In this document: piece after piece, positions 47,698-64,000 of the stretch | How positions within the stretch are numbered: the first letter of the stretch is position 1 | Layout: each line of letters starts with the position of its first letter | Assembly (NCBI GenBank): GCA_033442325.1 | Contig: JAWQFM010000017.1 | Location: 416,731-480,730 of the forward strand | DNA length: 64,000 nucleotides | Origin: Salpingoeca rosetta | Lineage: Eukaryota > Protista > Choanoflagellata | Direction: 5' to 3' | Position numbers and translations under genes: made by a program | The notes under the pieces: model-generated | Database searches by the model: none | Told to the model about the DNA's origin: nothing | What the model saw: only the letters and a program-made list of their open reading frames with translations

Positions 47698-49030
47698 TGT
47701 GTCTGTGTCTGCGTGTGTGTGTCTGTGTTGTGTCTGTGTCTGTGTCTGTGTGTGTGTCTGTGTGTCTGTGTATGTATGAAACCGTGGACTTTGCTAGTTG
47801 CTTCCTGTCAGCGTTCACTTTGCCTCTACCATTGCGCATTGAAGTTTCCTCGCTGGTCTCACCCCCCCCCCCCACTTCGGTCTGTCCATGTCACACTCTC
47901 CTTCTCCCACCGCACCACCGCTACTGCCAACAGCTGTTCTCTGGAGACCGCATCCTGGCCATCAATGGCGAAGACGTGTCAAACATGATTCACGAGGACA
48001 TCATTGCGTGCCTGCGTGCGTGCGATGAGCTTGACCTGCGAGTCACAAGCGACACCGCCCCTCTCCCCGCTGCCCTGACATCATCGCCAAAGACACCATC
48101 ACGTGCGCCGTCGAACGACGTGACCCCTGCGCGTGGACAGCTACAAACAGCGGCTGCAGCGACGACGAAACAAATGCTCACTGTTGGCGGGCTGGATGCG
48201 CTTGATGAGGAGTCGACGACTGACGGGTACGACAACCTCGGGTCCATCTATGGTCGCGCATCGACAGGGACAGGTGCACGCACCAAGGCAGCGGCGGCAG
48301 CAGCAGCGACAGCTGCACAGGACACACACACGGTTGAGGTCGCACGTGGTTCGGCAGGCCTTGGCCTGACCATCATCACGGACGAGGAGCTTGGCATTGT
48401 GCGGGTTGCGGGACTGGTACCAGGTGGTGCTGCCGACGTGACGGGCATGATTGAGATTGGGGACCGCATCTTGGCCATCAACGGCGAGATGACGGCTGGC
48501 AAGTCGCACGGTGGCGTGGTAGACATGCTTCGGCAGGGCGACGCTGTGCAGCTGGTCGTGTGCCGCGATCCAACACCGCTGCCAGAGGCGGACGAGGAAG
48601 AGGAAGTGGCTGGCGGCGAAGGCGCCGTGTTTGGCGGTGGCGGTGCGGGCCACGATGCCCATCACCCCATTGAGGAGCGGCGTGTTGTTCTGCACAAGAG
48701 CGAGCTTGGCTTTGGCATGCGCATCTCCTCTCCCTCCGACAACGACGTCGGCGCGTGCGTCACCACCGTTGTGGATGGCGGACCAGCCGCAGCCTCGGGC
48801 TTGGTGAGTGAGTAGTGCTTGTGTGTGTGTGTGGTGGGGGTGGGGGGGTGGTGAGTCGTTCGTCGTTCGTGTGTGTCGTGTGTGTGTGTGTTGNNNNNNN
48901 NNNNNNNNNNNNNNNNNNNNNNNNNNNNNNNNNNNNNNNNNNNNNNNNNNNNNNNNNNNNNNNNNNNNNNNNNNNNNNNNNNNNNNNNNNNNNCGTCGTC
49001 GTCGTCGTCGTCGTTGTGTTGTTGTTGTTG

Positions 49031-52263: not shown

Positions 52264-52534
52264 NNNNNNNNNNNNNNNNNNNNNNNNNNNNNNNNNNNNN
52301 NNNNNNNNNNNNNNNNNNNNNNNNNNNNNNNNNNNNNNNNNNNNNNNNNNNNNNNNNNNNNNNNNNNNNNNNNNNNNNNNNNNNNNNNNNNNNNNNNNNN
52401 NNNNNNNNNNNNNNNNNNNNNNNNNNNNNNNNNNNNNNNNNNNNNNNNNNNNNNNNNNNNNNNNNNNNNNNNNNNNNNNNNNNNNNNNNNNNNNNNNNNN
52501 NNNNNNNNNNNNNNNNNNNNNNNNNNNNNNNNNN
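52264..52534. other. Assembly gap (others at 24781-24880, 30028-30127, 33309-33408, 48894-48993)
   Basis: Runs of N. Confidence 0.99.
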
Positions 52535-52679: not shown

Positions 52680-54368
52680 CTAGTGTCGAGGCTGCATGCT
52701 GGCTTGTTGGCGGCGGAAGAGGCCATTCAAGGGGTGGCCGGTGTTGGTCTTGGTGTGGCTGATGCTGCTGTTCCTGTTGTTGCGAAAGGAGGTTGCCTGT
52801 GTGGCTGCCAGCTTCTTGCTTGCGCTCCGCACGCCATACATGGACTTGTACTTTTCCTCCTTACTCGCCGGCGGAAGCGACATGGCGGACCGTGCGTGCA
52901 GGCTCTGTGTTCTGGGCGAAACACGCGGCCACGTGGCATCAGCGTTAGTTGTGTTGCTACTATTGCTGCTGTTGTGATTGAGTGTGGCCGAGGAGGTGAA
53001 CGTCGGTGTCGTTGGCGCGGGAGCGGAGGCGCCAAGGACAACGGCTGGGTGGTCGTAGTCATCATCACGGGGCGGCTGTGAACCCGAAGAGGAGGAAGAG
53101 ATGAGTTGCACGTCGTTGTACGCGTGCTGCTGCGGTTGCTGCTGCTGTTTGGGTGGGAGCTGGGGCGGGGTTGAAGGGACGTCGTAGACGGCCGCGTAGT
53201 CCTCTTCTTGCTGCTGTTGCTGCTGCTGTTGCTGCTGCGGTAGTGGTGGTGGCGGTGGTTGCTGGCGGCGTTGTGGGGGCAGGGGCGGCGGCGGTGCTGG
53301 AGAGGAAGAAGCCACTGGCACAACGTAGACCTGTCGGGAGGCGCTGCCTGCGCTGTTGTTGCTGTGCTTGTCGTTGGGCGATGTCGCTCCACTGGTTCTC
53401 GGTGGCAAGGGAGGGGCTGGTGGCTGCGGTGAACTGGCGGACACTGACGCCACGCGAGGGCGCAGTGGAGGAGGCGGTGGCGATGGCGGAGATGGGCGAG
53501 AAGCCTTTCCGAGCGTGTGGGAGAGCGGTTGCGTAGACAGGGTTGAGCGACGCGGCGGTGGGAGTGCAGGGGCTCGACCGAGGGTGGAGGAGGTCCGGCG
53601 GGCTGTCGTGGTGATGGTCGCGGCCTTGCCAGACACAGACGGGGTGAGTCCTGCAATGGTGGGGTGGCTGTAACCTTCGTGCTTGTTGATGGTGTTGCTG
53701 TTGGTGGTTGTGGCGCTGGTGCTGCTGCTGGTGCTGCGCCTGAACGAAGGCTGTGATGGAGCGAGGCCTGTGACGGTGGGGTGGCTGTACCCTTCGTGCT
53801 TGTTGCTGGTGGTGTTGGTGGTGGTGGTGGTGCTGCTGCACCTGAACGACGGTTGTGATGGAGCGAGGCCTGTGACGGTGGGGTGGCTGTAGTCATCTAA
53901 CCCGTCGTCGTCGTCGTTGTCGTCATCGTCGTTGTCGTGGCTGTTGCCTGTTGTTGGTGGAGGGGCCACTCCTCTGCTGTTGGTGGTGCTCAAGGTTCTT
54001 GTCCTGTTGATCATGCTCAAAGTTGCTGTCCTGTTGATCATGGTGCCACACGCATCTGGGATGACGGTGGGGTGGTCATAGTCGCTGTCCTGCTGTCCGG
54101 ACGGGGCAGTGTCCGGTTGTTGTTGGTGGTGATGTTGTGGTCGTTGTTGGTGGTTTGTGTTCATCCAGGTGTGCCTGTTCTTGGAGGAGACGTGACAAGA
54201 AGCGGTGCGTCGTGGGGGAGGCAGCTCTGGCGCCGTGGCTGGTGGGCCGTGCTGTCCGGTTGGCCGCCTCCTGGTCATGAGGGTGGCGGATGAGGTCGTG
54301 GTGGCCGCAGAAGTCGTGTCGTCCACGCGCGCCCTGCACCGACGCGGCTGCTGCTGCCAACGCTGCAT
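52680..54368 (-). CDS. Intronless 562-aa Pro/Gln/Thr-rich disordered protein with 7 YxxP motifs
   Basis: Long ORF free of dinucleotide microsatellites, likely ATG at 54368 (MQRWQQQP). Motifs YDHP x2, YSHP x3, YVVP, YDVP and many PPPLPPR-type motifs. A sense-strand TG repeat follows the stop, as in other genes here. Confidence 0.6.
   Translation of the reverse strand: MQRWQQQPRRCRARVDDTTSAATTTSSATLMTRRRPTGQHGPPATAPELPPPRRTASCHVSSKNRHTWMNTNHQQRPQHHHQQQPDTAPSGQQDSDYDHPTVIPDACGTMINRTATLSMINRTRTLSTTNSRGVAPPPTTGNSHDNDDDDNDDDDGLDDYSHPTVTGLAPSQPSFRCSSTTTTTNTTSNKHEGYSHPTVTGLAPSQPSFRRSTSSSTSATTTNSNTINKHEGYSHPTIAGLTPSVSGKAATITTTARRTSSTLGRAPALPPPRRSTLSTQPLSHTLGKASRPSPPSPPPPPLRPRVASVSASSPQPPAPPLPPRTSGATSPNDKHSNNSAGSASRQVYVVPVASSSPAPPPPLPPQRRQQPPPPPLPQQQQQQQQQQEEDYAAVYDVPSTPPQLPPKQQQQPQQHAYNDVQLISSSSSGSQPPRDDDYDHPAVVLGASAPAPTTPTFTSSATLNHNSSNSSNTTNADATWPRVSPRTQSLHARSAMSLPPASKEEKYKSMYGVRSASKKLAATQATSFRNNRNSSISHTKTNTGHPLNGLFRRQQASMQPRH
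53640..53895 (-). repeat. Three coding repeats of YSHPTVTGLAPSQPSFR
   Basis: Near-identical nucleotide copies (tgtgatggagcgaggcctgtgacggtggggtggctgta x2) plus one diverged copy. Confidence 0.9.
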
Positions 54369-60189: not shown

Positions 60190-61057
60190 TACACCGATCC
60201 ACAACCTACACAACAGGTGCCTGCACAGCGACTTGACGATGCGCTTGTCGGAGATGTCGATGCTGGAGCGCGTACCCAACGACCCGCAGACACACGCGGC
60301 ACTAATCATGGGCCAGCTTGGGCTTGCCTTCTGGCACCAGTTTTGCTTCGTCGACGGCGCAGACGTAAACGTGGCCAAGCACCCCATGCAGCTGTCGCAG
60401 GGCGCATTCACCTGCAATCGCTGGCTCTCCCTGCCAGAGGCGCTTGGCATGCACCCGCACACCCGCAAGAGCAGAGGCATCGTCTTCCGCAGCGAATTCA
60501 GCGTGCTGCACTCGGTGCCCTTCAACCTCACCGCCGCAGACGAGCTGCGAGGTGCGTGGGACGAACGTGTCAGACACCTCTCCTGGACGAGCGTGAGCAG
60601 GCTGGCTGAAGGAAAAGTGGAGACCAAGTGCCTGGACCGCCGCTATGCGATTGCCATCATCTCTGGCCTGGATACGAACCTCCCCGGTCACCTCCGCCTG
60701 CTTCGCAGCCTGCAGGGCCTGTCGTCCCTCGTGCTGGAGGAGGCGGGCGAACCCACCGGGAAGACGAAGGCCAGCAGCACCAGGACGCAGCTGTGGCTGC
60801 TGCTCAAGACGCGACCACTGAAGAAGACGCCGGTGCCGTTGCGGTCCTTCGCTGCATTGCTGGACGATGTCGTGGAGCAGGTGCGCTTGCACAATCCACA
60901 ACACACTGGGCAGTTTTTGAAGGTGCAGTACCTCTCAGCGGAGGGCGACGCTACGGAGCAGTACGTGCTCTGGACAGCAGGCTTGAAGGTGCGCGGCGTG
61001 CGACACCACCGCATCGCCCTCCAGGAGCTGCAGGGCGCGCTCAGGCCAAGGTGGTGA
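57521..61057 (+). CDS. Secreted or signal-anchored multi-exon protein with a possible GT-A (GT2-like) glycosyltransferase region
   Basis: Signal peptide MSVRLLLLLLTLGLVAA. RNMALPYIASTKYTLWADHGTLWKDNMLAVMLKTART...VLVAPHV resembles the GT2 pattern RNxG...YxxFxDxD...L. Long last exon about 60217-61057. Confidence 0.5.
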
Positions 61058-61593
61058 TTGGTCTTGGGGTCTTGGTGGGTTGAGAAGAGAAGAAGAGAAG
61101 AGGCTGGAGGTGCGTTATATTGAGATGTGCTTTCGTTTGTAGCTGTGCCTGACAAGTAAAGACGTGATTCTGAGAGACAATTGACAACCTATGAGCTGAG
61201 TGATGGATGTGAAGCCAAGAAGCTGAAGAGAGGGGGAGAGAGGAACGGACGATGGTATGGCGATCAACACGCGCTTGCATGCTCGCTTGCTGCTCTGGAA
61301 GCAAATACACGTGCCCTGTGTGTTTTTGTGTGTCGCGCTGTCGTGCATGGCTGCTTTTGTTGAAGATCTTTGTTGAAGACTTTTGTTGACAGTGTGAATG
61401 AAATTTCCACGTACGCCTATCTGGCAGCAAAACGATGGTGGAGGAAAGCGACGCCATTTTGCTCTGCACTCCCACAACAAACAACAAGCGCACGACAAGC
61501 AACAACCGCTGGACCACTGCCTTTGTGTGTGTTAGGTGTGTTGGAGCTGTCCTGCGAAGAGGAGAGCGTCTCACCTTCCCCTTCCCTGCCAGG

Positions 61594-63433
61594 ATGAGCT
61601 CGCGAAAGCCAGCTAAGAAGAAGGCATCCCAACGCAGCCGTCGCAAGAAGGTGTTCATTTCGCTGCGTTTTGGAGAGGCTGGCCATGCAGGCAAGCTGCT
61701 CAAGCGAGAGTTGGAGCAGGTGCACGGCCTGGACGTGTTCCTGTGTGACGTTGAGCCTGGTGGCAACATGGAAGAAGAGATCATCACGGCTCTCGCGGCC
61801 TGTGACTTGGCTGTCATCATGGGCACCAAGACGTACGGCAAGAAGACGCCTTCCACCTTCAGCACTTATGAGGAGCTGCGGTTTATCACGGCAAGGCAGA
61901 AGCCATTTTTCTTCATCAAGATGTGTGACGACTTTGAGGAGGAGTTCGCCCAGTTCCATCTTCCGGATTCCATCTCCTACTTTCCCTGGATCCCTGCATC
62001 CAACGATCCAGAATCCATGACGCTTCCACCCGACCTCACCTCCGCCATCGTGAACAAGCTCACCCACATCAGCACAACTAACGGCGTGACAGGCGGCAAG
62101 GGTCGCTCAATTGCCATCACCCGGCAGCTCCCAACCACGCTGGACGCTGGCCTGACACAGTGGCTGCAGCGTTACAACATGTTGTCCTCCATGGGGCTGG
62201 TGCTTGAGAAGCACCACATCACAAGTCTTCACAAGTTGGAGCAGGCAACAGAGGCCATGCGGAACCCAAGAAAGCGTGCACTGGCGAAGCGGCAGCAGCA
62301 ACAGCACCAGGGGAAGAAACGAGAAGTGCAGGGAAGCGAACCCAAGCCAACGAAGGGCGTGCGACAGCTGCATGAAGGAGTGCTGATGAAAGAGAAGGAG
62401 TTGAAGCCAGCAGAGATTGCCAAATTCCGGCGAGCGTGCAAGGCGAAGACGTGGCGCAACAACGATATGGGAAATGAGAAAGATGCGAAGGTGGATGGCA
62501 CAGAAGAGGTGCGTGAAAACGAAGATGCAAAGCAGGCAGGCGACACGTTTAATGATGAGGCAGGCCACGAAGAAGAACAAAATAAGGTGCAACCGCAACA
62601 GCAAGCGAGTGAAACACCACCGCCTGTGCGTGAGAATGTTGCGAATGAAGCGCTGTTTCGGACGTGCTTGGAGAAAGTGAGCGACGAGGACGGTAAGGAA
62701 AAAATTCTCAGCATTTGGAACAATACGTGCGGCTCCAAACTCTCGTAAGTACAGACTCCAAGGAAGCATATAAACGACGAATGGGTCCATGTGGCGTGTG
62801 AGATGGCTGTAATGGTGTGGATTGTGGACGTATGTTGTGGACAGGTTTGTGGTGCACGGTACTTCGACGGATTGTCTGATGCACTGTGCCTTTAACGCGA
62901 CATTGCATCTACATACACACACATATCCGACCGAACCACATGCAGCCTTGCATTCAACAATCTTGGACCTGCAGGCGGAACGGCGATTGGGGAGGCACTG
63001 AAAGTCAACACCACGCTGACATCGCTCGAGTTAGTTGTCGAGTGATTGTGTGCGCAGAAGCATGATATATCATGAATTTTGATGTAGTGTTTGTGTTGCG
63101 GTTGTACATTGTGGTGTTGATGTGTTGTGAGTGGTGGTTTGTGTGGTGGTTTGTGAGTGGTGGTGTGGGTGAGATAGTGGAGGGGGGCGTGTTGTAACAA
63201 CGTGAGACGATGCCGCATGCCTCCCTTTGTTTTGTGCGCGCGTGCGCGTGTGAGCATGTTTGCTGTGCGTGCATGTGTTTTGTGTTTTGAGTGGAATGCT
63301 GAGGTGGATTGTGTGATGGGCTGTGTCATTCTCTCAACATTGCATACACACATACGTACACACACACATACACACTTACGTACACACACGCGCGCGCATA
63401 CTCACATACGTACACATACGCACGCGCATACTC

Positions 63434-63479
<46 letters not shown>

Positions 63480-63559
63480 CTTAAACAACAACAACTTAAA
63501 CAACAACAACAACAACAACTTAAACAACAACAACTTAAACAACAACTTAAACAACAACT

Positions 63560-63596
<37 letters not shown>

Positions 63597-63716
63597 CCAC
63601 ACGCCGCAATCAATGCACAAAACAACATGCAGCTTGTACAGTAACAGTCTTGGACCTGCAGGCGGAACGGCGATTGGGGAGGCACTGAAAGTCAACACCA
63701 CGCTGACATCGCTCAA
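61594..63716 (+). CDS. TIR - SAM-like - RI-type LRR protein, 5' part (exons 61594-62744, 62946-63029, 63633-63716; continues past the window)
   Basis: TIR: KVFISLRFGE...LDVFLCD...IITALAACDLAVIMGTKTYG...STYEELRFI...KPFFFIKM. SAM-like: LTQWLQRYNM...LEKHHITSLHKL. 28-aa LRR exons: LAFNNLGPAGGTAIGEALKVNTTLTSL. Confidence 0.8.
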
Positions 63717-64000
63717 GTGAGTTGTTTTGTTGCGGCTGTGTATGTTGTGTATGAATATGTGCGACATTGTGTGCGACATTGTGCGCGTGCTTGCGTGTGG
63801 TTATGTTGCGGTTGTACATTGTGGTGTTGATGTGTTGTGAGTGGTGGTTTGTGAGTGGTGGTTTGTGAGTGGTGGTTTGTGTGGGTGAGATAGTGGAGGG
63901 GGGCGTGTTGTAACAACGTGAGACGATGCCGCATGCCTCCTTTTGTTTTGTGCGCGTGTGCGCGTGTGAGCATGTTTGCTGTGCGTGCATGTGTTTTGTG
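62946..64000 (+). repeat. Tandem exon+intron duplication (about 690-nt unit) carrying LRR cassettes
   Basis: Exons 62946-63029 and 63633-63716 share an identical 66-nt core. Intron sequence about 63095-63285 recurs almost identically at about 63805-64000. Confidence 0.9.

What the first reader, a model, noticed from the sequence alone, without database searches (positions are those of the whole stretch)
61594..63716. Cytosolic TIR - SAM-like - LRR protein: candidate innate immune receptor with an NADase-type TIR
Seen: an N-terminal TIR retaining Glu at the catalytic-helix position (STYEELRF), a SAM-like helical segment, a charged linker and then RI/NLRC3-type LRRs. There is no signal peptide, TM segment or NACHT/NB-ARC before the LRRs. 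Established: SARM1, plant and bacterial TIRs use this Glu for NAD+ cleavage upon oligomerisation, and SAM domains drive SARM1 oligomerisation. Inference: an NLR-like sensor in which SAM replaces the NTPase as the oligomeriser, an architecture I do not recognise from animals or plants.
Basis: partly seen in the sequence, partly recalled or inferred. Interest (0 to 1): 0.8.

Follow-up and report, generated by a model that had tools for sequence, protein, structure and literature searches.

The report
TIR-SAM front of choanoflagellate ROCO receptor
This is the front end of a Salpingoeca rosetta gene that joins an enzyme-type TIR domain and a SAM-like domain to leucine-rich repeats; five sister genes continue into a Roc-COR GTPase, so the "sensor without an NTPase" idea probably fails.

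Summary
Exon 1 (61594-62744) encodes a confidently modelled TIR fold with a conserved Glu (E94). It also encodes a SAM-like five-helix domain split by a basic insert, a charged linker and the first LRR. It fits in phase 2 onto two 84-nt RI-type LRR exons (62946-63029, 63633-63716).

The window is scaffold GL832972.1 of Salpingoeca rosetta, and an assembly gap starts just after base 64000. The public model here is therefore a truncated 389-aa protein.

Four annotated paralogues have N-termini 38-81% identical to exon 1 (PTSG_13127, 12575, 07288, 12838). Three have mapped exon plans that match the window's. All four continue after 4-7 LRR exons into a Roc GTPase and COR domain. A more distant fifth (PTSG_08667) has a TIR-like N-terminus, LRR, Roc and COR.

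The gene is therefore most likely a TIR-SAM-LRR-Roc-COR (ROCO) protein, with the NTPase after the LRRs rather than missing. I could not see the downstream exons of this copy. I found no RNA evidence for the exon 1-exon 2 splice.

Function as an NLR-like NADase sensor is inferred, not shown. Earlier agents of this scan reported related ROCO-TIR families elsewhere in this genome. I rate it a new variant of a known kind, of moderate interest.

The parts
61594..62744 (+). Exon 1 (1151 nt, ends in phase 2): TIR, SAM-like domain, charged linker and first LRR
   Evidence: ORF and donor GTAAGT at 62745. It is 75-81% identical in protein to exon 1 of PTSG_07288, PTSG_12575 and PTSG_13127, and 38% to PTSG_12838. 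Three mapped paralogue models end exon 1 at the homologous donor in phase 2. dN/dS against paralogues is about 0.27.
61642..62088 (+). TIR domain (residues about 17-165)
   Evidence: TIR_2 E 0.0019. Atlas features point to TIR_2 clusters at 0.95. AF2 pLDDT is about 95. The Foldseek PDB top 50 are all TIR. The atlas fold search returns only TIR_2 clusters.
61873..61875 (+). Codon of Glu94, the candidate catalytic Glu in the alphaC helix
   Evidence: At least 90% conserved in the 79-sequence alignment A2. It lies in the first turn of helix 91-100 of the model. It is followed by Leu, as in the plant xEL motif; the Roq1 alignment ends just before it. The mapping is partly my own inference.
62143..62445 (+). 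SAM-like helical domain (residues about 184-284) split by a basic insert (about 225-260)
   Evidence: In alignment A3, stand-alone TIR-SAM-like relatives lack the insert. The profile's best PDB sequence hits are SAM domains. VIA-align top hits are SAM domains with Z 5-7.7. There is no Pfam SAM hit and no Foldseek hit.
62446..62628 (+). Charged, low-complexity linker
   Evidence: K/E/Q-rich composition. Low pLDDT at 284-300. dN/dS is 0.3-0.47 against paralogues.
62629..62744 (+). First LRR (N-terminal cap repeat: ...ALFRTCLEKVSDEDGKEKILSIWNNTCGSKL)
   Evidence: It shows the LxIxNNxxG strand motif and is conserved in all paralogues, where it runs on into the LRR array. dN/dS is 0.12-0.25.
62745..62945 (+). 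Intron 1 (201 nt, GTAAGT...ATGCAG); holds the in-frame TAA at 62746-62748
   Evidence: The same acceptor hexamer ATGCAG is used by the LRR exons of PTSG_12575. Contigs of runs X4 and X5 cross it unspliced, but those runs may be DNA.
62946..63029 (+). Exon 2: one 28-residue RI-type LRR (84 nt, phase 2-2); donor GTTAGT
   Evidence: LRR_6 E 0.016 for the lone repeat. Homologous repeats in PTSG_12575 give LRR_6 E 5e-30.
63030..63632 (+). Intron 2, with (TG)-rich 5' part, (CA)-rich part and a (CAA)n/CTTAAA array at about 63430-63600
63633..63716 (+). Exon 3: second 84-nt LRR exon; donor GTGAGT
   Evidence: The 54-nt core is identical to exon 2. Differences sit in the LxxNx strand codons and the last codon (family D5).
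63717..64000 (+). Start of intron 3; cassette repeat of intron 2; runs into an assembly gap just past the window
   Evidence: 63879-64000 is 98% identical to 63163-63284. The N run starts at about window 64003, seen in the extension L008:1-368, which covers window 64001-64368.

Best explanation
This is the 5' part of a multi-exon Salpingoeca rosetta gene for a cytosolic TIR - SAM-like - linker - RI-type LRR - Roc GTPase - COR protein. It is a further member of a small paralogue family of ROCO proteins. The public annotation cuts it to 389 aa because the scaffold has a gap inside the repeated LRR-exon cassettes.

Shown: the TIR fold, the conserved Glu94, the SAM-like fold, the in-phase one-repeat-per-exon LRR cassettes, purifying selection on exon 1, and the Roc-COR continuation in all five annotated paralogues.

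Inferred: this copy also runs on into Roc-COR. The protein works as an NLR-like sensor: the variable LRR face binds a ligand, the Roc-COR GTPase acts as the switch and dimeriser, and the N-terminal TIR-SAM module is brought together so that paired TIR domains cleave NAD+ or make a cADPR-type signal.
For: Locus identity: the window equals GL832972.1 of GCA_000188695.1, and the gene called at 61594-63045 has 389 aa. An N run begins right after the window end.

Paralogues: exon 1 is 81, 76, 75 and 38% identical to the N-termini of PTSG_13127 variant, PTSG_12575, PTSG_07288 and PTSG_12838. In three mapped models, exon 1 ends in phase 2 and is followed by 4-7 LRR exons, nearly all of 84 nt. A large cap+Roc exon and two COR exons come next. 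Pfam finds LRR_6, Roc above its cut-off, and weak COR-A and COR-B.

Domains: TIR; SAM-like.

Selection: dN/dS is 0.2 in the TIR and 0.12-0.25 in the pre-LRR repeat.

Splicing lead: a 295-nt contig of run X5 joins a window-type LRR core (at most 1 mismatch in 54; PTSG_12575 exons differ at 5-6) directly to 28 letters. These are 27/28 identical to the start of the PTSG_12575 cap/Roc exon. That looks like a spliced junction.

Precedent: another S. rosetta TIR with a catalytic Glu made cADPR in E. coli (bioRxiv 10.64898/2026.04.20.719644).
Against: The downstream exons of this copy were not seen.

There is no RNA support. Two RNA runs gave 0 and 3 reads, none on exon 1. The only contigs crossing the exon 1 donor are unspliced, from runs of unknown type.

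The exon 2 donor is GTTAGT, and the public model reads through it to a TGA at 63043-63045.

TIR_2 and SAM scores are below Pfam cut-offs for this protein. The SAM structural Z values are under 8.

No enzyme activity, ligand or immune role has been tested for any member.
Confidence: 0.72

Rival explanations
1. The gene really is short: a stand-alone TIR - SAM-like protein (384 aa if intron 1 is retained, about 389-416 aa with one LRR). It would be like the free TIR-SAM-like proteins seen in environmental assemblies, and the LRR cassettes downstream would belong to another transcript.
For: The public model is 389 aa and ends at the TGA at 63043-63045. About 20 of the 150 best relatives are short TIR proteins with a SAM-like tail and nothing else. 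Contigs of X4 and X5 cross the exon 1 donor and intron 1 unspliced. The exon 2 donor GTTAGT is not the commonest form.
Against: The last 38 residues of exon 1 form half of an LRR unit. They are under strong constraint (dN/dS 0.12-0.25) and are continuous with the LRR array in all paralogues. The donor position and phase are conserved with three mapped paralogue models. The truncated model is explained by the assembly gap. X4 and X5 may be DNA. Donors with C at +3 occur in the annotated S. rosetta paralogue models.
Confidence: 0.13
2. One reading: a TIR-SAM-LRR sensor with no NTPase at all, in which SAM-driven oligomerisation replaces the NACHT/NB-ARC switch.
For: No NTPase domain lies before the LRRs or anywhere in the window part. 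A SAM-like fold is present next to the TIR.
Against: Every annotated paralogue with this N-terminus carries Roc-COR after the LRRs. The window stops after two LRR exons and the scaffold has a gap there. An X5 contig links a window-type LRR exon to a Roc-exon start.
Confidence: 0.08
3. A decaying duplicate: the copy is a pseudogene or a fragment produced by cassette duplication. It would not be expressed, whatever its reading frame.
For: No reads on exon 1 in about 3.2 Gb of RNA reads from two runs. The odd GTTAGT donor. Very recent cassette duplication, with introns 98% identical.
Against: The 384-codon frame is intact, with dN/dS 0.2-0.3 against three paralogues. Splice sites and phases are intact. 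Whether the RNA runs contain the organism, or the right condition, was not shown.
Confidence: 0.07

Closest known systems
S. rosetta paralogues PTSG_13127, PTSG_12575, PTSG_07288, PTSG_12838 (and the more distant PTSG_08667), all 'hypothetical protein' in NCBI
   Same: Same N-terminal TIR, SAM-like domain with basic insert, linker and first LRR (38-81% identity). Three mapped models (PTSG_12575, PTSG_07288, PTSG_12838) show the same exon 1 donor phase and 84-nt LRR exons.
   Different: The window copy has its own LRR core (GPAGGTAIGEAL rather than GPEGGKAIGEAL). Its array is interrupted by an assembly gap, so its Roc-COR part is unseen and its public model is truncated.
ROCO proteins (LRR-Roc-COR: bacterial CtRoco, human MASL1/MFHAS1 and LRRK2, brown-algal LRR-ROCO candidate immune receptors)
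   Same: The paralogues have LRR followed by Roc and COR. One LRR per phase-2 exon matches the brown-algal ROCO genes (PMC11378527).
   Different: An N-terminal TIR-SAM module and no kinase. The exons are 84 nt with RI-type 28-residue repeats, against 72 nt in brown algae. COR scores are below Pfam cut-offs.
SARM1 / TIR-1 (ARM-SAM-SAM-TIR NADase)
   Same: The TIR model matches SARM1 TIR (TM by target 0.63-0.66). The SAM-like model matches SARM1 SAM (Z 6.1-6.5). A Glu is retained in alphaC.
   Different: The order is reversed (TIR before SAM). There is one SAM-like domain with an insert, and no ARM domain. LRR-Roc-COR is attached. Sequence identity is about 20%.
Plant TIR-NB-LRR receptors (RPP1, Roq1, RUN1)
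   Same: N-terminal TIR with catalytic-position Glu, a repeat sensor and a central NTPase. These are the best structural and profile matches.
   Different: The NTPase is a Ras-like Roc GTPase placed after the LRRs, not a STAND NB-ARC before them. The LRRs are of RI type.
LRR-ankyrin-Roc-COR-TIR-SAM family of the same genome (earlier notes s1-432458, s1-435939)
   Same: The same building blocks (LRR cassettes, Roc-COR, TIR, SAM-like) in the same organism.
   Different: There the TIR-SAM sits at the C-terminus, with ankyrin repeats. Here it is N-terminal. I did not compare the sequences.

Membership tests
TIR domain (Pfam TIR_2, STIR clan) | Flavodoxin-like five-strand beta-alpha fold of TIR domains | tested here: met
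   AF2 model pLDDT about 95 for residues 20-165. The 50 best Foldseek PDB matches are all TIR domains. The atlas fold search returns only TIR_2 clusters.
TIR domain (Pfam TIR_2, STIR clan) | Score at or above Pfam's gathering cut-off | tested here: not met
   19.1 bits against 28 for this protein. At family level, 69 of 79 relatives hit TIR_2 at E<=0.01, best 2.6e-9.
Enzymatic (NADase/cyclase) TIRs | Conserved Glu in the alphaC helix | tested here: met
   E94 is at least 90% conserved, lies in helix 91-100, and shows the xEL pattern as in plant TIRs. A residue-level structural superposition was not possible.
Enzymatic (NADase/cyclase) TIRs | NAD+ cleavage or cADPR-isomer production dependent on that Glu | not testable with these tools
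   This needs an enzyme assay. The only precedent is another S. rosetta TIR of a different subfamily.
SAM domain | Five-helix SAM bundle | tested here: inconclusive
   The great majority of the 50 best VIA-align matches are SAM domains (Z 7.7 to about 5, 59-64 residues aligned, rmsd 2.0-3). Z is under 8, model pLDDT is 70, and Foldseek found nothing.
SAM domain | Sequence match to SAM profiles | tested here: not met
   No Pfam SAM hit in this protein or in 79 relatives at E<=0.01. Only weak hits exist: P0001 SAM_2 E 0.11, and the family profile against ANKS1B SAM E 0.0064.
ROCO proteins | Roc GTPase followed by COR in the same polypeptide | not testable with these tools
   This part lies beyond the window and an assembly gap. 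It is met in five paralogues: Roc 29-37 bits against a cut-off of 27, with weak COR-A and COR-B.
NLR / STAND receptors | NACHT or NB-ARC STAND NTPase | tested here: not met
   No such hit in exon 1 or in any paralogue.
SARM1 family | ARM - tandem SAM - C-terminal TIR order | tested here: not met
   TIR is N-terminal. There is a single SAM-like domain and no ARM.
Ribonuclease-inhibitor-type LRR (Pfam LRR_6) | 28-29-residue repeats with LxxLxLxxNxLGxxG and a helical back | tested here: met
   Two 28-residue units read directly. LRR_6 gives E 0.016 on one lone unit and E 5e-30 on the homologous array of PTSG_12575.

The most novel reading that the evidence does not exclude
[quoted passage not shown] In it, a Roc-COR GTPase takes the place of the STAND NTPase of NLRs. 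An N-terminal TIR-SAM module acts as a SARM1-like oligomerising NAD+-cleaving effector. Specificity comes from duplicating or alternatively spliced one-repeat LRR exons.
Probability: 0.3. Interest if true: 0.7.

Novelty: new variant of a known kind. Interest (0 to 1): 0.5.

Why it matters
A published survey of choanoflagellate transcriptomes reported no NLR-type cytosolic sensors in choanoflagellates (PMC6040629). A family that couples an enzyme-type TIR and a SAM-like domain to LRRs and a Roc-COR switch would be a candidate functional substitute. It would also give a tractable system for asking how TIR signalling was wired before animals, because S. rosetta can be genetically manipulated (from my own knowledge, not checked here). 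On the practical side, the public gene model at this locus is truncated by an assembly gap and should be revised.

Tried and rejected
1. RNA evidence. Read laying on 60300-63060 with two RNA raw-read runs and two contig runs gave no reads on exon 1 and no joints. Expression and the exon 1-2 splice therefore remain untested.

2. The gene's own full product. Three word searches failed to find it: exon 1; PTSG_12838 residues 1-460; and the PTSG_12575 Roc-COR part. They returned only paralogues.

3. Walking downstream. The neighbouring single-exon gene (52683-54368, minus strand) located the scaffold. The extra 368 bases past the window are all N apart from the first one or two.

4. PTSG_13127 as the same locus. 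Rejected: 85.6% nucleotide identity and a different scaffold. The variant contig in X4 is that paralogue, not an allele.

5. Foldseek on the SAM-like model gave no match. Only the exhaustive aligner found SAM domains.

6. phmmer of exon 1 against PDB sequences gave nothing useful.

7. The MARTX hit in NCBIfam (E 0.16, on the low-complexity linker) was dismissed as compositional.

8. Literature searches for a described choanoflagellate TIR-ROCO protein found none in the held library.

Full report
WHAT IS IN THE SEQUENCE

An ATG at 61594 opens a 384-codon frame that ends at a TAA at 62746-62748. That stop overlaps a consensus donor, GTAAGT, at 62745.

If the exon ends at 62744 it is in phase 2. 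The next AG (62944-45, hexamer ATGCAG) then opens an 84-nt exon, 62946-63029, that completes the split codon. This exon reads LAFNNLGPAGGTAIGEALKVNTTLTSL. A second 84-nt exon, 63633-63716 (acceptor ATGCAG, donor GTGAGT), continues the frame with LYSNSLGPAGGTAIGEALKVNTTLTSL.

The two exons share an identical 54-nt core. They differ in the LxxNx strand codons and the last codon. The introns are themselves duplicated: 63879-64000 is 98% identical to 63163-63284.

THE DOMAINS

TIR. Pfam gives only a sub-threshold TIR_2 hit (19.1 bits, cut-off 28, residues 20-109). NCBIfam gives a weak Thoeris ThcB4 hit.
- An exhaustive profile search found 995 relatives at E<=0.001 and 191 at E<=1e-30.
- Of 79 aligned relatives, 69 hit TIR_2.
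- The AlphaFold model built on that alignment has pLDDT about 95 for residues 20-165, with the expected beta-alpha order.
- Its 50 best Foldseek matches in the PDB are all TIR domains: RPP1, SARM1, AbTir, MyD88, RUN1.
- Glu94 (codon 61873-75) is at least 90% conserved and sits in the first turn of helix 91-100. It is followed by Leu, as in the plant WCxxEL motif. The profile alignment to Roq1 stops a few residues before it, so that mapping is partly my inference.

SAM-like domain. No Pfam SAM hit exists here or in relatives.
- About 20 short relatives carry a tail with the pattern L..WL....L..fe..L..LG....dv......G.iT...L...G...lR..Rf. The S. rosetta proteins carry the same tail split by a basic insert of about 35 residues or more.
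- A profile of this tail finds SAM domains first among PDB sequences, weakly: ANKS1B E 0.0064, then caskin, SHIP2, EphA2 and others.
- The tail folded alone (pLDDT 70) matches SAM domains almost exclusively in an exhaustive structural scan. Examples are p73 SAM (Z 7.7, rmsd 2.0, 60 of 61 residues), EphA1 (Z 7.2) and SARM1 SAM (Z 6.5 and 6.1).
- Foldseek found nothing, and Z values under 8 are not decisive. I therefore call it SAM-like and moderately supported.

The rest of exon 1. A K/E/Q-rich linker follows. The last 38 residues of exon 1 (...ALFRTCLEKVSDEDGKEKILSIWNNTCGSKL) already form an LRR unit, so the LRR domain starts inside exon 1. There is no hydrophobic segment that could be a signal peptide or TM helix.

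WHERE IT COMES FROM AND WHAT THE ANNOTATION SAYS

The single-exon neighbour at 52683-54368 (minus strand) is an exact product of GCA_000188695.1, scaffold GL832972.1, Salpingoeca rosetta. In that record a gene is called at window 61594-63045 with a 389-aa product and no Pfam hit.

Two single-intron splicings fit this product size. One uses the same acceptor as mine (intron 62664-62945); the other is 62693-62974. Both read through the exon 2 donor (GTTAGT) to a TGA at 63043-45. I could not check the model's exact exons.

The scaffold turns into a run of N directly after window base 64000. The truncated model is therefore an artefact of a gap inside the repeated cassettes.

THE PARALOGUES SETTLE THE ARCHITECTURE

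Exon 1 is 81, 76, 75 and 38% identical to the N-termini of four annotated S. rosetta proteins:
- PTSG_13127 variant (1299 aa)
- PTSG_12575 (1165 aa)
- PTSG_07288 (1102 aa)
- PTSG_12838 (1348 aa)

PTSG_08667 is a more distant member.

I mapped three of these models onto their loci. Each has a 1139-1388-nt first exon ending in phase 2 at the homologous donor. Then come four to seven LRR exons, nearly all of 84 nt. After these lie a roughly 950-1160-nt exon holding the LRR cap and the Roc GTPase, and two more exons for COR. Pfam finds LRR_6 (E 5e-30 in PTSG_12575), Roc above its cut-off, and weak COR-A and COR-B. None has NACHT or NB-ARC.

Exon 1 of the window copy is under purifying selection against these paralogues:
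- TIR: dN/dS about 0.2
- SAM-like region: 0.2-0.3
- Linker: 0.3-0.47
- Pre-LRR repeat: 0.12-0.25

EVIDENCE ON THIS COPY'S OWN 3' PART

I could not fetch the DNA beyond the gap. Two leads exist.
- An earlier first-stage note (s1-432535, unchecked) reports an LRR-cassette array on a ROCO GTPase 5.4 kb past the window end.
- A 295-nt contig of run X5 matches the window's LRR core with at most one mismatch in 54 (the PTSG_12575 exons differ at 5-6). It then continues without an intron into letters that are 27/28 identical to the first 28 bases of the PTSG_12575 cap/Roc exon, reading ...TSL NIGSNSISGR. This looks like an exon-exon junction of this gene or a near-identical copy. The run's type is not on record.

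EXPRESSION

Two RNA raw-read runs gave 0 and 3 reads, none on exon 1, and it was not shown that the organism is in those runs. Contigs of X4 and X5 cross the exon 1 donor and intron 1 unspliced, but those runs may be DNA. The exon 1-exon 2 splice therefore rests on conservation of donor, phase and coding sequence, not on RNA.

INTERPRETATION

Its key inference, an NLR-like sensor with no NTPase in which SAM is the oligomeriser, is most likely an effect of the window and scaffold ending after two LRR exons. In every complete relative the NTPase is a Roc GTPase with COR, placed after the LRRs.

The most likely mechanism is an inference from SARM1, plant TNLs and Roco biochemistry. The LRR face senses a ligand. 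The Roc-COR module switches or dimerises with its nucleotide state. The TIR-SAM module is then clustered so that paired TIRs form an active site around Glu94 and cleave NAD+ or make a cADPR-type messenger.

A 2026 preprint showed Glu-dependent cADPR production by a different S. rosetta TIR (F2UB80). The abbreviation list of its Figure 3 legend includes LRR, Roc and COR among the architectures drawn. None of the six UniProt accessions of this paralogue family occurs in its held supplements.

NOVELTY

ROCO proteins with TIR domains have been mentioned before: TPR-ROCO-TIR in Chondrus, and N-terminal TIR in 'different organisms' (PMC11378527). One-LRR-per-phase-2-exon ROCO genes are described in brown algae (same paper).

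The S. rosetta paralogues are public but unnamed. Earlier agents of this scan reported related LRR-ankyrin-Roc-COR-TIR-SAM genes in this genome.

I found no paper describing the N-terminal TIR-SAM-LRR-Roc-COR layout in a choanoflagellate. I therefore rate it a new variant of a known kind.

Noticed in passing
window 64001-64368 (seen as L008:1-368): The scaffold GL832972.1 has a run of N starting right after the window end, inside the LRR cassette array. The public gene model (61594-63045, 389 aa) is truncated there.
   Followed up: yes
L005:12072-12155 (PTSG_12575 locus): An intact 84-nt LRR exon (LRNNDLGPEGGKAIGEALKVNTTLTSL) with AG/GT borders lies between two annotated LRR exons but is left out of the public model. 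It may be a cassette exon that is skipped, or an annotation omission.
   Followed up: partly
L007:16506-23943 (PTSG_13127 locus): The closest paralogue also has a 7.4-kb assembly gap inside the gene. Its public model reads through broken LRR sequence and is fused to a TsaD/Kae1 domain (PF00814), which is probably a mis-joined model.
   Followed up: partly
window 63401-63600: Intron 2 holds a (CAA)n tract punctuated by CTTAAA units. It is preceded by (TG)-rich sequence and then (CA)-rich sequence, fitting the polarised intron pattern noted elsewhere in this genome (s1-440534).
   Followed up: no
one search hit list; P0020, P0022, P0044: The same TIR subfamily is expanded in S. rosetta with other partners. 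Examples are PTSG_02597 (728 aa), PTSG_02868 (612 aa) and PTSG_06287 (1800 aa, with SecA/helicase-like domains). Elsewhere, in proteins whose source organisms I did not look up, it occurs with WD40, ARM, PDZ and Ras-like GTPase domains.
   Followed up: partly
window 52683-54368 (minus strand): A single-exon 562-aa low-complexity Pro/Ser/Thr/Gln-rich protein with repeated DYDHP/YSHPT motifs. Its product matches the public annotation exactly, and it has no Pfam hit on record.
   Followed up: no
window 24781-24880, 30028-30127, 33309-33408, 48894-48993, 52264-52534: Five further N gaps lie in the window, several of them inside the large PDZ-rich gene noted by others.
   Followed up: no
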